Source: Guillardia theta CCMP2712 (Eukaryota; Protista; Cryptophyta). From it: a stretch of DNA of 35,093 bases. The notes under the pieces were generated by a model, which saw nothing but the letters and a program-made list of their open reading frames with translations, ran no database searches and had not been told where the DNA came from. Location: contig NW_005434572.1 in the NCBI RefSeq assembly GCF_000315625.1, forward strand, positions 1 to 35,093, given 5' to 3'. Position 1 is the first letter of the stretch, and the number at the start of each line of letters is the position of its first letter. Positions 28,778-35,093 of the stretch are shown one piece after another. The translations under genes were made by a program, and so were the position numbers.

Positions 28778-29233
28778 CACGCGATACCCGGAGGCAGCCG
28801 ACTGACCACTGTCAGTCGAGACGTCCGCTGCCGCCACAAAGCGGGCGGCCGCGGACGGAGAAAGGGCAGCCGCCGACAAGGAGCCGGCGTTGCCCGGGGG
28901 TCCGCCTGGGGCAGCGGACGGAGGGAGGCTGGACACATGAACACGGTACCGCTCGAGGCAGTCCTCCTCGCTAGCCTCCGAGTCAGCGGTAGCCGAGTCA
29001 GTGGTAGGCGGCGACGCCGCGGCAACACTTCGAGGTCGTCACTGGCGGGATTACACTTGGCGGCCTGCCTATCGGCACGGCCCCGTCGGATGGATTTCAT
29101 GCTAGTCAGCTCCGAGCGAAGGTTTCTAGCAACATAGGATTTACTGGCAGAAGGTAAAAAGTGCCTCAAGCAAAACAAAGCAGGAACAACCTAAACCTCC
29201 AGGCACACAGCACACAGCGAGAAGCTGCACAAA
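28778..29233 (-). mobile_element. Inverted fragments of the CRE-like retroelement: 3' UTR and terminus (29233-29134), unassigned segment (29133-29026), ORF C-terminal tail (29025-28778)
   Basis: Reverse complement matches about 31055-31154 and about 30641-30900. Confidence 0.9.
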
Positions 29234-31154
29234 CATAATGCTGGAGCGATCCTCTACCGTCGTGTGAAGGCTCCTGCACCGGCTGCAGATGGCGCGGCGA
29301 TCCCACCTGCCCCGGCTGCTGTGCCTGATGACGCAGGACGCCCCCCGGCATCTGTGGTACACATCCCTGGTTTGCGCGCTCTCGTCGACTCGTCTCATGA
29401 GCACTTCATTCCTCCGCCTGCGCAGCGAAATGTGACTCCTCTTGTCATGCGCGTCTTCCCTCGCCATGTGCATGCTCGCGCTGCGCTGACCGATCAGCAG
29501 CGTGATATCCTCACCTTGCACAGCCGCAGGACACACTCGCTCAAGTCGCAGGATAGGGTCTTGCAGTCTACCATCTTCGCTCATTTTCCTGAGCGAGACC
29601 TGAGCCACTCTCCGATGCGAGTCTCGAGCTACTACCCCCTCAAGGCCTTCCCGCACCGCTATGCTCAGATGCTCGACTGCTATCTCCATGGCATGCCGAT
29701 CTGCCAGTGTCCGACGGAATGTGATGGATGTCAGCGCGAGCTCGATCCCTCCGTTGCTGCACATCATCTCCAGACCTGCAAACGCCGATCCTCCAAGCTT
29801 CCAACGGCGCATGACAACCTTACTCGTACGATTCGGTCGATGCTGAACGAAGCTGGTCTTCAGAGCGTCATCGATACAGTGGGGGATCCTCGTTCTCGAC
29901 GGCAGGTACCCTCCCATCCTCATGGCCGCAAGATGAAGGGCGATATCCACATCCCTGGAATCCGCGATCGAGGGTCCGAGCAGTACGAGGGCTTGATGGC
30001 GGACGTGACGTTGGTCCACCCTTACATTGGTAGCTCTCCAAGTGGGGGGAGGTCAACCTCGACGCCCTCCATGTTGCAGCGTCTGAGAAGATTCGCAAAC
30101 ATCGCGCTGCATATGCTATGACTACTCCTCCTCGAGCGTTCATCCCTCTTGCCATCTCGACGGACGGTACCCTGCATCCTGACACCCTCCGCTTCATCTG
30201 GTATCTTGCGGACATCATTGCTCAGCGCTCGATGCCTCTTGAGGATGCGGCGTTTGGTCGGCACTTCGTGCCTGATGACGGACCTGCTGCTGAGGTCTTG
30301 GCTCGCAAACGCGCCGCCACCTATCAGCGCCTCACCATGCAGCTGACGCTGGAAGCGCTCTTGTCTGGTGCGCAAGCACTCCTCGAGCCAGAGGACAGCT
30401 CCTCCTCGGACTTTGTCGAGTCGCCCGAGGAGTCTTCGCCGGAGGTCTCCGACTCCGATGGGGGACACCCTTCGAGTGGCCCCGACGATGGGCGCGGAGC
30501 TGGCGACTCGGAGGCGTCTCCGTCCCTCACTGTGACGTCGGGTGCCTCCGGAGAGCTCGACACCACTGGGGTGCTTGCTGCTGGTCCGAGCTCGCCTGCT
30601 TCCTCCCCGGCATCGGTCGGGTCACGCCGGTCCTTGGGCATTGCCGCGGCGTCGCCGCCGTCACGGGCGGCTACCGCTGACTCGGCTACCGCTGACTCGG
30701 AGGCTAGCGAGGAGGACTGCCTCGAGCGGTACCGTGTTCATGTGTCCAGCCTCCCTCCGTCCGCTGCCCCAGGCGGACCCCCGGGCAACGCCGGCTCCTT
30801 GTCGGCGGCTGCCCTTTCTCCGTCCGCGGCCGCCCGCTTTGTGGCGGCAGCGGACGTCTCGACTGACAGTGGTCAGTCGGCTGCCTCCGGGTATCGCGTG
30901 TAAGGGATTTTCTTCCTCCTGCATGCTCCTGCTGCTTGTTGCTTGATTGCTTGACCCTTAGGCTGCTTGTCTGCGCGGCTTCGCGCTTGGGCTGGCGATG
31001 CCGCGTCTGGGTGCCAGCAGTGCTGGTTCTTTTCGGGCTTGTGTTTTGTGTGTGATTGTGCAGCTTCTCGCTGTGGACTGTGTGCCTGCCGGTTCAGCTT
31101 GTTCCTGCTTTGTTTTGCTTGAGGCACTTTTTACCTTCTGCCAGTAAATCCTAT
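29234..31154 (+). mobile_element. 5'-truncated CRE-like non-LTR retrotransposon copy 1 (zinc knuckle, RLE endonuclease, acidic tail, 3' UTR); frameshifted
   Basis: CDGC-x10-HHLQTC zinc knuckle, AHDNL, KGDIHI, ADVTLVHP, (after a frameshift) AASEKIRKH, FIPLAISTDG. TAA at 30901-30903; ends TAAATCCTAT. Confidence 0.85.
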
Positions 31155-33568
31155 GCCAGAAGCTGCGCTTCTTCCTCCAGGGGTCATCTCCGTTTTTCCC
31201 GCGGGTCCAATCACAGATTCGTCGCTTTGACCTCTCTGTCCACCTGGCGCTTGAGAAATACCACCTAAATCCTATATACCGCTGGCCTTCCTCGCAGTAC
31301 CTCGCCGCGCATCCCGACCTGCTAGAGTTTGCGAGGTTCAAGCGGGAGCTTCCGCATAGTCGGGGAGGGGACGAGTTCACGCCCTCTGAGGGTCTACACC
31401 CCGCTGTTTACTATACGGCTATCGGGAGGGGACGAGTTCACGCCCTCTGAGGGTCTACACCCCGCTGTTTACTATACGGCTATCGCTCGCTTCCTCGCTT
31501 GGTACTCTGACCAGCCCATGTCCCGGATGTTGCCCTCTCCTCATAGCCTGGACGTTCACTGCTCGAGATCTCTCCGTGCCCAGAAGCATCCTCTGGCGAC
31601 CTTCTTCGTTGAGGCGCACGACTTCGTTCATAATGCTGGAGCGATCCTCTACCGTCGTGTGAAGGCTCCTGCACCGGCTGCAGATGGCGCGGCGATCCCA
31701 CCTGCCCCGGCTGCTGTGCCTGATGACGCAGGACGCCCCCCGGCATCTGTGGTACACATCCCTGGTTTGCGCGCTCTCGTCGACTCGTCTCATGAGCACT
31801 TCATTCCTCCGCCTGCGCAGCGAAATGTGACCCCTCTTGTCATGCGCGTCTTCCCTCGCCATGTGCATGCTCGCGCTGCGCTGACCGATCAGCAGCGTGA
31901 TATCCTCACCTTGCACAGCCGCAGGACACACTCGCTCAAGTCGCAGGATAGGGTCTTGCAGTCTACCATCTTCGCTCATTTTCCTGAGCGAGACCTGAGC
32001 CACTCTCCGATGCGAGTCTCGAGCTACTACCCCCTCAAGGCCTTCCCGCACCGCTATGCTCAGATGCTCGACTGCTATCTCCATGGCATGCCGATCTGCC
32101 AGTGTCCGACGGAATGTGATGGATGTCAGCGCGAGCTCGATCCCTCCGTTGCTGCACATCATCTCCAGACCTGCAAACGCCGATCCTCCAAGCTTCCAAC
32201 GGCGCATGACAACCTTACTCGTACGATTCGGTCGATGCTGAACGAAGCTGGTCTTCAGAGCGTCATCGATACAGTGGGGGATCCTCGTTCTCGACGGCAG
32301 GTACCCTCCCATCCTCATGGCCGCAAGATGAAGGGCGATATCCACATCCCTGGAATCCGCGATCGAGGGTCCGAGCAGTACGAGGGCTTGATGGCGGACG
32401 TGACGTTGGTCCACCCTTACATTGGTAGCTCTCCAAGTGGGGGGAGGTCAACCTCGACGCCCTCCATGTTGCAGCGTCTGAGAAGATTCGCAAATATCGC
32501 GCTGCATATGCTATGACTACTCCTCCTCGAGCGTTCATCCCTCTTGCCATCTCGACGGACGGTACCCTGCATCCTGACACCCTCCGCTTCATCTGGTATC
32601 TTGCGGACATCATTGCTCAGCGCTCGATGCCTCTTGAGGATGCGGCGTTTGGTCGGCACTTCGTGCCTGATGACGGACCTGCTGCTGAGGTCTTGGCTCG
32701 CAAACGCGCCGCCACCTATCAGCGCCTCACCATGCAGCTGACGCTGGAAGCGCTCTTGTCTGGTGCGAGGCGCATGACGCCCTTGCGGCAACTCCTCGAG
32801 CCAGAGGACAGCTCCTCCTCGGACTTTGTCGAGTCGCCCGAGGAGTCTTCGCCGGAGGTCTCCGACTCCGATGGGGGACACCCTTCGAGTGGCCCCGACG
32901 ATGGGCGCGGAGCTGGCGACTCGGAGGCGTCTCCGTCCCTCACTGTGACGTCGGGTGCCTCCGGAGAGCTCGACACCACTGGGGTGCTTGCTGCTGGTCC
33001 GAGGCTCGCCTGCTTCCTCCCCGGCATCGGTCGGGTCACGCCGGTCCTTGGGCATTGCCGCGGCGTCGCCGCCGTCACGGGCGGCTACCGCTGACTCGGC
33101 TACCGCTGACTCGGAGGCTAGCGAGGAGGACTGCCTCGAGCGGTACCGTGTTCATGTGTCCAGCCTCCCTCCGTCCGCTGCCCCAGGCGGACCCCCGGGC
33201 AACGCCGGCTCCTTGTCGGCGGCTGCCCTTTCTCCGTCCGCGGCCGCCCGCTTTGTGGCGGCAGCGGACGTCTCGACTGACAGTGGTCAGTCGGCTGCCT
33301 CCGGGTATCGCGTGTAAGGGATTTTCTTCCTCCTGCATGCTCCTGCTGCTTGTTGCTTGATTGCTTGACCCTTAGGCTGCTTGTCTGCGCGGCTTCGCGC
33401 TTGGGCTGGCGATGCCGCGTCTGGGTGCCAGCAGTGCTGGTTCTTTTCGGGCTTGTGTTTTGTGTGTGTTTGTGCAGCTTCTCGCTGTGGACTGTGTGCC
33501 TGCCGGTTCAGCTTGTTCCTGCTTTGTTTTGCTTGAGGCACTTTTTACCTTCTGCCAGTAAATCCTAT
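31155..33568 (+). mobile_element. 5'-truncated CRE-like copy 2, starting in the RT thumb region; 61-bp internal tandem duplication; frameshifted
   Basis: QKLRFFLQG...RRFDLSV...RELPHSRGGDEFTPSEGLHPAVYYTA resembles the post-RT 'LP...GGLG....AAY' motif. Near-identical to copy 1 downstream. Duplication at 31363-31484. Confidence 0.85.
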
Positions 33569-34723: not shown

Positions 34724-35089
34724 CAGTGGGGATCCTCGTTCTCGACGGCAGGTACCCTCCCATCCTCATGGCCGCAAGATGAAGGGCGATATCCACATCC
34801 CTGGAATCCGCGATCGAGGGTCCGAGCAGTACGAGGGCTTGATGGCGGACGTGACGTTGGTCCACCCTTACATTGGTAGCTCTGCCGACCTGACCAAGTG
34901 GGGGGAGGTCAACCTCGAGCGGCCCTCCATGTTGCAGCGTCTGAGAAGATTCGCAAATATCGCGCTGCATATGCCATGACTACTCCTCCTCGAGCGTTCA
35001 TCCCTCTTGCCATCTCGACGGACGGTACCCTGCATCCTGACACCCTCCGCTTCATCTGGTATCTGGCGGACATCATTGCTCAGCGCTCG
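34724..35089 (+). mobile_element. RLE-domain fragment of the retroelement, lacking the 10-bp deletion seen in copies 1 and 2
   Basis: GDPRSRRQVPSHPHGRKMKGDIHI...ADVTLVHPYIGSSADLTKWGEVNLE. Confidence 0.85.
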
Positions 35090-35093
35090 GTAT

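What the first reader, a model, noticed from the sequence alone, without database searches (positions are those of the whole stretch)
28778..35093. Nested, self-associated array of a CRE-like RLE non-LTR retrotransposon
Seen: at least six pieces of one element, head-to-tail and inverted, fill the last 6.3 kb with almost no unique DNA between them. The CCHC knuckle, HD, GD..DV..K-type nuclease core, KIRKY and F.PLA.ST.G motifs appear in order. Established: this order defines R2/CRE-group elements, which are often site-specific (SL RNA genes for CRE1/SLACS/CZAR; telomeres for MoTeR and Cnl1, the latter forming arrays of truncated copies). Inference: a possibly undescribed algal CRE lineage that accumulates on its own copies, perhaps at a subtelomeric or heterochromatic locus.
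Basis: partly seen in the sequence, partly recalled or inferred. Interest (0 to 1): 0.8.

Follow-up and report, generated by a model that had tools for sequence, protein, structure and literature searches.

The report
Self-nesting retrotransposon island, candidate centromere
The last 6.3 kb of this Guillardia theta window is a pile of broken copies of one R2-like jumping gene inserted into each other. The family occurs only in such piles, one per chromosome-sized scaffold and far from the telomeres, which makes them good candidates for the alga's still unknown centromeres.

Summary
Of the read bases in 28778-35093, 99.8% belong to one non-LTR retrotransposon, present as at least nine pieces on both strands. 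The motif order CCHC, HD, GD, DVT, EK, F.PLA.STDG is real, but all three nuclease copies here are frameshifted and no RT core lies in the window.

The genome is Guillardia theta CCMP2712. Longer copies elsewhere show a single ORF of about 1,425 aa holding RT, then CCHC, then a restriction-like endonuclease. There is no APE domain and no poly(A); the 3' end is ...GCCAGTAAATCCTATA. A family profile and a predicted fold both match R2 proteins best.

CRE-clade membership could not be tested, because no named reference sequences were reachable.

The subtelomere idea is not supported. About 800 element 3' ends sit in one 2-25 kb nest per large scaffold. This includes three scaffolds with telomeres at both ends, where the nests lie at 56-67% of the length. 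Of 94 distinct 3' junctions, 93 abut another piece of the same element, at many positions and in both orientations, with no target motif. Related families in the same genome are dispersed.

The best reading is region-level targeting, probably to centromeric chromatin, convergent with Zepp and ZeppL of green algae. The assembly gap joins pieces of opposite orientation, so nothing reads across it. Earlier follow-ups of this scan reached the same reading on other scaffolds.

The parts
28778..29010 (-). Inverted fragment holding the last 233 nt of the ORF. It forms the left edge of the nest against unique DNA.
   Evidence: 99% complementary to 30668-30900 and 33082-33314.
29026..29128 (+). Short fragment of the region just after the RT core (ORF nt about 2005-2098).
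   Evidence: 91% identical to L024:2450-2543.
29133..29235 (-). Inverted fragment of the end of the 3' UTR. The element's 3' terminus lies at 29133.
29234..31155 (+). Copy 1, 5'-truncated at ORF nt about 2575. It holds the linker, CCHC (29702-29779), RLE motifs (29807-30168), a Ser/Ala/acidic tail, the stop codon at 30901-30903 and the 3' UTR up to the terminus ...GTAAATCCTAT. A 10-nt deletion after 30037 shifts the frame between the DVT and EK motifs.
   Evidence: The 10 nt GCCGACCTGA are present in other copies and in run X12.
31156..33569 (+). Copy 2, 5'-truncated at ORF nt about 2178 and joined head-to-tail to the 3' end of copy 1. It carries a 15-nt insert made mostly of the element's own 3' end at 31265-31279 and a perfect 61-nt tandem duplication at 31363-31484. 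CCHC lies at 32097-32174. It has the same 10-nt deletion as copy 1. The stop codon is at 33315-33317.
   Evidence: Copy 2 is 98.9% identical to copy 1 over 2,059 nt.
33570..33687 (+). Repeat of the first 118 nt of copy 2, including the start of its mini-insertion. Together with the 3' end before it, it is 100% identical to 31101-31273.
   Evidence: This could be a local duplication or an assembly collapse; the two cannot be told apart here.
33686..33959 (+). Extremely 5'-truncated copy holding the last 40 nt or so of the ORF plus the 3' UTR. The assembly gap cuts it 19 nt before the 3' terminus.
33960..34347 (.). Assembly gap (N). Its two flanks come from pieces of opposite orientation.
34348..34724 (-). 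Inverted fragments of the C-terminal tail coding region. They carry a 19-nt insert of the element's own 3' end at 34418-34436 on the - strand.
34724..35093 (+). RLE fragment with the GD, DVT, EK and FIPLAISTDG motifs. It keeps the 10 nt that copies 1 and 2 lack, but has a 2-nt insertion near 34919 that shifts the frame. It runs into the window end and a 5.5-kb gap.

Best explanation
The region is the left part of a nest of dead, mostly 5'-truncated copies of one single-ORF non-LTR retrotransposon of Guillardia theta.

The element is built as follows: a low-complexity N-terminus, RT, a linker, a CCHC knuckle, an R2-type PD-(D/E)XK endonuclease, a Ser/Ala/acidic tail, and a 252-nt 3' UTR with no poly(A).

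Shown: the nest grew by new copies landing inside or next to older copies, in either orientation and at many positions. Many events are abortive and left only 12-300 nt of the 3' end, with a few extra untemplated bases at the junction.

Inferred: each insertion happened by target-primed reverse transcription. Local duplication then added to the pile, because copies 1 and 2 share the same 10-nt deletion.

Shown: genome-wide the family is confined to one such nest per chromosome-sized scaffold, away from the telomeres, and the junctions share no target motif.

Inferred: the insertion machinery is directed to a chromosomal region rather than to a DNA sequence, most likely to centromeric or otherwise special chromatin. 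I put the centromere identification alone at about 0.5.
For: - Element identity. RT motifs and a weak RVT_1 hit appear in longer copies. The family profile hits PDB R2 proteins at 3.3e-18 with separate RT and CCHC/RLE stretches, against 6e-4 for L1 ORF2p. The predicted fold of the C-terminal part ranks six R2 structures first, then PD-(D/E)XK nucleases. Across 13 relatives D (DVT), H, K, F and P are invariant, and GD and the CCHC histidine nearly so.
- Nest structure..
- Genome-wide confinement. There are 797 matches to the 3'-terminal 17-mer against 0 for the control pattern. Scaffolds C1-C14 and C17-C19 each have one cluster. The protein and UTR searches give one cluster per contig on every contig they list, about 70 in all.
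- Position on chromosomes. C2, C5 and C8 carry (TTTAGGG)n at both ends in the outward orientation. Their single nests lie at 720-726 kb of 1.29 Mb, 692-706 kb of 1.23 Mb and 787-792 kb of 1.18 Mb.
- No sequence target. 93 of 94 3' junctions abut the same element, at coordinates 53-4518 and on both strands, with no motif.
- Sister families. Related families of 36-45% identity with the same architecture, some with intact 1,350-aa frames, are dispersed outside the nests.
- Independent assembly. A metagenome contig shows the same nesting of 3'-end stubs.
- Precedent. Zepp clusters in Coccomyxa occur 'strictly one cluster per chromosome', and ZeppL marks Chlamydomonas centromeres (PMC3446292, PMC8226300).
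Against: - No centromere protein data exist, so 'centromere' rests on position and analogy only.
- Two of the 19 largest scaffolds (C15, C16) show no nest, and C1 has one stray 3' end 25 kb from its nest.
- The nests are full of gaps, and the order of pieces inside this one is unverified. The window has a 100%-identical 173-nt duplicate and two gaps.
- The loci used for the junction statistics were fetched because they hold the element, so the figure of 93 in 94 is biased upward.
- I found no fully intact full-length copy in the assembly, and RNA support is thin: 64 reads in the raw-read run, plus contigs in a run whose RNA status is only a guess.
Confidence: 0.75

Rival explanations
1. Sequence-specific self-homing. 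The endonuclease recognises a site inside the element, as R2 does in 28S rDNA or CRE elements do in spliced-leader genes, so nests arise from ordinary site specificity.
For: RLE-bearing clades are mostly target-specific (PMC4640811). Nearly all junctions lie in element DNA.
Against: Insertion points span coordinates 53-4518 in both orientations. Base counts for 12 nt on either side of 66 well-mapped junctions show no motif. Pfam finds no zinc-finger or Myb DNA-binding domain at the N-terminus.
Confidence: 0.08
2. Random insertion followed by selection. The element inserts anywhere, but in this gene-dense genome only copies in a dispensable, already-ruined region persist.
For: G. theta is gene-dense. 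The window has ORFs up to about 23 kb and then a gene-free flank. The nests are gene-free.
Against: Sister families with the same architecture persist dispersed across the scaffolds. One search lists only one of about 100 3' ends well outside a nest, on C1. Copies are 97-100% alike, so they are young, and young dispersed copies should still be visible.
Confidence: 0.1
3. Assembly artefact. Collapsed or misplaced repeat reads, or scaffolds falsely joined through a shared repeat, create the appearance of one internal nest per scaffold and of this particular array.
For: There are gaps inside and after the array (33960-34347 and C102:35094-40630). The window has a 100%-identical 173-nt duplicate. 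Many other nests are mostly N. One contig of run X12 leaves the window exactly at the nest edge and continues into DNA of another scaffold.
Against: Unique flanks lead directly into element DNA within continuous sequence at many loci. An independent metagenome assembly shows the same kind of nesting. The DNA runs give element depth 10-250 times that of the flank, with a gradient rising towards the 3' end, as expected for many truncated copies. False joins would not be expected to give exactly one nest in each of three scaffolds that have both telomeres.
Confidence: 0.07
4. Subtelomeric or telomere-healing array, the first reader's suggestion, as with Cnl1, MoTeR or HeT-A/TART.
For: Head-to-tail series of variably 5'-truncated copies that all end at the same 3' terminus occur at C93:73306-74389 and C36:422411-423403. 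This resembles telomeric arrays.
Against: The nests lie hundreds of kb from the (TTTAGGG)n ends of C2, C5 and C8. The window holds no telomere repeats. Copies occur in both orientations.
Confidence: 0.03

Closest known systems
Zepp of Coccomyxa subellipsoidea C-169 and ZeppL-1_cRei of Chlamydomonas reinhardtii (L1-clade LINEs)
   Same: [quoted passage not shown] The clusters are mostly internal, 1.5-42 kb long in Coccomyxa, GC-rich relative to their surroundings and barely expressed, and are taken as putative centromeres (PMC3446292, PMC8226300).
   Different: Zepp and ZeppL belong to the L1 clade, which by my own knowledge carries an APE endonuclease and a poly(A) tail. The Guillardia element has an R2-type restriction-like endonuclease and no poly(A), and its host is a cryptophyte. 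The resemblance is therefore convergent, not inherited.
R2 (R2Bm, R2Tg and R2Pm in the PDB)
   Same: Both have a single ORF with RT, then a linker, a CCHC knuckle and a PD-(D/E)XK endonuclease. R2 is the best sequence-profile match and the best fold match. R2 also adds untemplated bases at 3' junctions (my own knowledge).
   Different: R2 inserts at one site in 28S rDNA, guided by N-terminal zinc-finger and Myb domains. Here there is no rDNA target and no such domain was detected. Identity to R2 is only about 15%.
CRE-clade elements
   Same: Both are RLE-bearing non-LTR elements with a CCHC + RLE module C-terminal to the RT.
   Different: Those elements target spliced-leader genes or telomere repeats, and this one does neither. 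Clade membership was not tested, because no reference sequences were reachable.
Dualen/RandI
   Same: It is an RLE-bearing non-LTR group, and earlier notes of this scan report it at G. theta telomeres.
   Different: Dualen also carries an APE endonuclease (PMC4640811). By my own knowledge it carries an RNase H as well. Pfam finds neither domain in full-length relatives of this family, and this family avoids the telomeres.

Membership tests
Non-LTR (LINE) retrotransposon | An RT with the LINE-type motifs, no LTRs, variable 5' truncation and a fixed 3' end. | tested here: met
   RT motifs are present in L024 and P0006. RVT_1 hits reach 2e-08 and the profile hits R2 and L1 RTs. UTR matches all end at the same base while their starts vary.
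RLE-bearing non-LTR group (CRE, R2, R4, NeSL, HERO) | A CCHC knuckle followed by a PD-(D/E)XK restriction-like endonuclease, C-terminal to the RT. | tested here: met
   The conserved pattern is C..C...HH..C, HD, GD, DVT..H, K..K and F.P. It aligns to the R2Tg CCHC/RLE region. The fold search ranks six R2 structures first, with probability 0.98-1.0.
RLE-bearing non-LTR group (CRE, R2, R4, NeSL, HERO) | No apurinic/apyrimidinic (APE) endonuclease. | tested here: met
   Pfam finds no Exo_endo_phos domain in the 1,511-aa relative P0198, in P0181 or in the G. theta N-terminal part.
CRE clade | Placement within CRE in an RT phylogeny. Clades are defined by RT phylogeny and domain structure (PMC4640811). 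| not testable with these tools
   No named CRE, NeSL, R4 or HERO sequences could be obtained. All relatives found are unnamed metagenome or G. theta proteins.
CRE clade | Site-specific insertion into spliced-leader RNA genes or telomere repeats. | tested here: not met
   The window has no Rfam gene. Of 94 junctions, 93 lie in the element's own DNA at many positions. The nests are far from the telomeres.
R2 clade | A 28S rDNA target and N-terminal zinc-finger/Myb DNA-binding domains. | tested here: not met
   There is no rRNA in the window and no ZF or Myb hit. This test used Pfam only, so a divergent domain could have been missed.
Dualen/RandI | An APE domain and an RLE in one protein, plus an RNase H by my own knowledge. 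| tested here: not met
   No APE or RNase H hit.
Zepp-type centromere-associated LINE cluster (a functional kind, not a clade) | Nested clusters of one family, with one cluster per chromosome. | tested here: met
   There is one cluster on each of 17 of the 19 largest scaffolds, and exactly one on each of the three scaffolds that have both telomeres.
Zepp-type centromere-associated LINE cluster (a functional kind, not a clade) | L1-clade element with an APE endonuclease and a poly(A) tail. | tested here: not met
   This is an RLE element whose 3' end is ...AAATCCTATA.
Centromere | Occupancy by CenH3/CENP-A, or kinetochore function. | not testable with these tools
   No chromatin data are available.

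The most novel reading that the evidence does not exclude
The nests are the regional centromeres of Guillardia theta's many small (up to about 1.3 Mb) chromosomes. An RLE-type LINE, from a group otherwise known for sequence-specific targets, has evolved chromatin-directed insertion into them, perhaps through its long disordered Ser/Ala/acidic C-terminal tail, which the dispersed sister family P0181 lacks. This would be a convergent counterpart of Zepp/ZeppL, and the first centromere marker for cryptophytes.
Probability: 0.45. Interest if true: 0.75.

Novelty: new variant of a known kind. Interest (0 to 1): 0.6.

Why it matters
I found no description of cryptophyte centromeres in the paper library. 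A sequence marker that occurs once per chromosome would let them be tested directly by CenH3 ChIP. It would also help to order scaffolds and to count chromosomes.

For transposon biology, this is an endonuclease class known for strict sequence targets that here behaves as a region-targeted, self-nesting element. The same lifestyle evolved independently in green-algal L1 elements. That argues that 'live in the centromere' is a recurrent safe-haven strategy in compact algal genomes.

Tried and rejected
- Pfam on the window ORFs alone gave nothing. The domains became visible only through longer copies and a family profile.
- Single-sequence phmmer against the PDB gave nothing. The profile was needed.
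- The very long 'open frames' (up to 5,858 aa) are runs of N, not genes.
- The word-based protein searches, two cluster look-ups and the Atlas search returned only G. theta or unnamed metagenome proteins. No clade phylogeny against named references could therefore be built.
- I looked for a target motif or target-site duplication at the 3' junctions and found none.
- Short-read contigs could not verify the window's own junctions. The raw RNA run gave only 64 reads, from copies other than the window's.
The flanks I already held are only mildly GC-poor (32-54% against about 58%), and I do not count that as evidence.
- I did not build a consensus of the element. All analyses used natural copies.
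Full report
**What is in the window.** Repeat finding and BLAST against copies taken from other scaffolds show that 28778-35093 is a patchwork of one element. Of its 5,928 read bases, 5,914 (99.8%) match the element.

There are at least nine pieces, on both strands:
- Two long 5'-truncated copies lie head to tail (29234-31155 and 31156-33569). They are 98.9% identical over 2,059 nt.
- Three short pieces sit at the left edge (28778-29010 on the - strand, 29026-29128 on the + strand, 29133-29235 on the - strand).
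- Two further 3' pieces follow (33570-33687 and 33686-33959).
- After the gap come an inverted stretch of C-terminal coding sequence (34348-34724) and a third nuclease fragment (34724-35093).

Inside these pieces are two tiny inserts that consist mostly or wholly of the element's own last bases: 15 nt at 31265-31279, and 19 nt at 34418-34436 on the - strand. There is also a perfect 61-nt tandem duplication at 31363-31484.

**The gap.** The left edge of 33960-34347 is + strand 3' UTR, 19 nt short of the element's end. The right edge is - strand coding sequence. The two sides are therefore not continuous, and any ORF drawn across the Ns is meaningless. The window ends in the array. On the scaffold (C102, 265,613 bp) a 5.5-kb gap follows at 35094-40630, and no element DNA lies beyond it. 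The nest is thus between 6.3 and 11.9 kb long.

**The motifs.** In all three copies, however, the frame changes between DVT and EK. Copies 1 and 2 lack 10 nt after 30037 and 32432, and the third copy has 2 extra nt. Other genomic copies and contigs of run X12 carry the 10 nt and read straight through. The window holds no RT catalytic core; copy 2 begins at about codon 726.

**What the element is.** The genome is Guillardia theta CCMP2712, since all named hits are GUITHDRAFT proteins. Longer copies on C32, C63 and C77, a 947-aa protein from a metagenome contig (P0006) and a 1,511-aa relative at 70% identity (P0198) give the full plan:
- one ORF of about 1,425 aa;
- a low-complexity poly-Ala/poly-Gln N-terminus;
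- an RT with recognisable motifs;
- a linker, then CCHC, then the nuclease;
- a Ser/Ala/Pro/acidic tail of about 250 aa;
- a 252-nt 3' UTR ending ...GCCAGTAAATCCTATA, with no poly(A).

Several tests place the protein:
- Pfam sees only a sub-threshold RVT_1 hit.
- An exhaustive HMMER search found 757 relatives, and 13 of them align over the C-terminal module. In that alignment D (DVT), H, K, F and P are invariant, and GD and the CCHC histidine nearly so.
- A profile of 16 family members hits R2 proteins of the PDB best, at 3.3e-18. The RT and the CCHC/RLE module match as separate stretches, aligned motif for motif. L1 ORF2p reaches only 6e-4.
- An AlphaFold model of the C-terminal part has pLDDT 65-90 over the nuclease. 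In Foldseek it finds six R2 structures first, then viral cap-snatching, Cas4-type and restriction nucleases.
- No APE, RNase H, zinc-finger or Myb domain was detected.

It is therefore an RLE-bearing non-LTR element.

**The clade.** Whether it belongs to the CRE clade could not be tested. Clades are defined by RT phylogeny (PMC4640811), and every relative I could reach is unnamed.

**Where the family lives.**
- The 3'-terminal 17-mer occurs 797 times in the genome, against 0 for the control pattern. In the part of the list that is complete, scaffolds C1-C14 and C17-C19 each have exactly one cluster a few kb long. C15 and C16 have none, and C1 has one stray copy 25 kb from its cluster.
- Searches with the nuclease, the RT and the 3' UTR give the same picture on about 70 contigs. 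Hits on a contig always fall within one stretch of 2-25 kb.
- The telomere repeat (TTTAGGG)n, a lead taken from earlier notes of this scan, stands at both ends of C2, C5 and C8 in the outward orientation. These scaffolds are complete chromosomes of 1.29, 1.23 and 1.18 Mb. Their single nests lie at 720-726 kb, 692-706 kb and 787-792 kb, that is 56-67% along.

The subtelomere idea is therefore not supported.

**How the nests grow.** In the loci I hold, 93 of 94 distinct 3' junctions are followed, after 0-12 extra bases (usually TATA plus a few untemplated letters), by another piece of the same element. These targets lie at coordinates from 53 to 4518 and in both orientations. Base counts for 12 nt either side of 66 well-mapped junctions show no motif. 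The loci were chosen because they hold the element, so the proportion is biased upward; the spread of positions is not.

Series of ever shorter copies that all end at the same 3' base (C93, C36), together with the 15-19-nt stubs, look like repeated and often abortive target-primed reverse transcription.

Copies 1 and 2 of the window share the same 10-nt deletion. A 173-nt junction segment is repeated at 100% identity. Local duplication, or assembly collapse, therefore also contributed here.

Two sister families in the same genome have the same architecture at 36-45% identity, and some keep intact 1,350-aa frames. They are dispersed outside the nests, for example at C22:193, 306 and 571 kb against that scaffold's nest at 646 kb. 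Confinement to nests is thus a property of this family. It is not a property of RLE elements in general, nor of how the assembler treats repeats. A metagenome contig assembled independently shows the same stacking of 3' stubs.

**Reads.**
- In the two DNA runs the element's depth is 10-250 times that of the unique flank and rises towards the 3' end. This fits many truncated copies, although the tool warns that these depths are not copy numbers.
- Run X12 behaves like RNA, because its element depth is about equal to its flank depth. It holds contigs of the intact version of the element.
- The raw RNA run gave only 64 reads, from copies other than the window's. Expression is low, and the window's own copies are not shown to be expressed.
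- Short contigs cannot confirm the window's own junctions.

**Interpretation.** The pattern is one nest of a single LINE family per chromosome, internal, gene-free and hardly expressed. [quoted passage not shown] Those are L1-clade elements in green algae. Here an unrelated RLE-type element does the same in a cryptophyte.

I conclude that insertion is directed at a chromosomal region rather than a sequence, and that the region is probably the centromere. The region-targeting part I hold at about 0.8 and the centromere identification at about 0.5. I found no paper on G. theta non-LTR elements or on cryptophyte centromere sequences in the library.

**Relation to earlier work of this scan.** Follow-up notes on three other scaffolds (s1-436954, s1-431607, s1-431620) reached the same reading of one nest per scaffold and a candidate centromere. 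My counts, the telomere check and the junction analysis were made independently here and agree with them. This window is one more instance, not a first sighting.

Noticed in passing
window 28513-28778 and L036 (C103:185678-188707): In run X12 a 1,595-nt contig covers the unique flank and leaves the window exactly at the nest edge (28778). It continues with letters that match C103:187178+ (29 of 30, unique in the genome). That C103 stretch holds no element DNA and does not resemble the flank, and there is no canonical splice signal at the break. A chimeric contig, a scaffold misjoin or an unusual transcript are all possible.
   Followed up: partly
window 23000-28777: The last large ORFs end near 23 kb. 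They are followed by about 5.7 kb without ORFs of 150 aa or more apart from one at 25891-26475. GC there is lower (42-53% against about 58%), and a 25-nt tandem repeat of 10.8 copies lies at 26160-26429. Flanks of some other nests are also GC-poorer (32-54%).
   Followed up: partly
G000 C22:193553-197260, C31:85972-89679, C19:796730-800500 and others: At least two sister RLE-LINE families (36-45% and 94-98% identity to P0181) are dispersed along the scaffolds. Some have uninterrupted frames of 1,350-1,400 aa and may be active.
   Followed up: partly
P0090 (metagenome protein, 1,577 aa): A distant relative of the family carries a full ubiquitin C-terminal hydrolase (UCH) domain (PF00443, E = 4e-29) N-terminal to its RT-RLE part. 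This recalls the Ulp1-like protease of Utopia/NeSL-clade elements.
   Followed up: no
runs X5, X8-X10 and X13-X16; L038, L039: Runs labelled lake-water, runoff and aquatic metagenome hold 53-60% of the sampled words of this element. Near-identical (P0006) and 94%-identical (P0013) proteins also come from metagenome assemblies. Either close relatives of G. theta are widespread, or G. theta DNA is a common contaminant or feed organism.
   Followed up: no
L037 (Logan SRR22388310 contig, 4,961 nt): This contig holds a full-length, uninterrupted 1,511-aa homologue at 70% protein identity from an unidentified organism. Its N-terminal region of about 400 aa is not low-complexity, unlike the poly-Ala/poly-Gln N-terminus of the G. 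theta copies.
   Followed up: partly
G000 C1:710935-710951: A solitary copy of the element's 3'-terminal 17-mer lies 25 kb outside the C1 nest (683-686 kb). It is the only out-of-nest 3' end in the part of the list that was shown.
   Followed up: no
window 1-6900 and 13000-14700: There are many long trinucleotide and hexanucleotide repeats (GAT, TGC, AGG, CTC, and CACCAG x61 at 6529-6897) with strong strand skews. They probably code for low-complexity protein.
   Followed up: no
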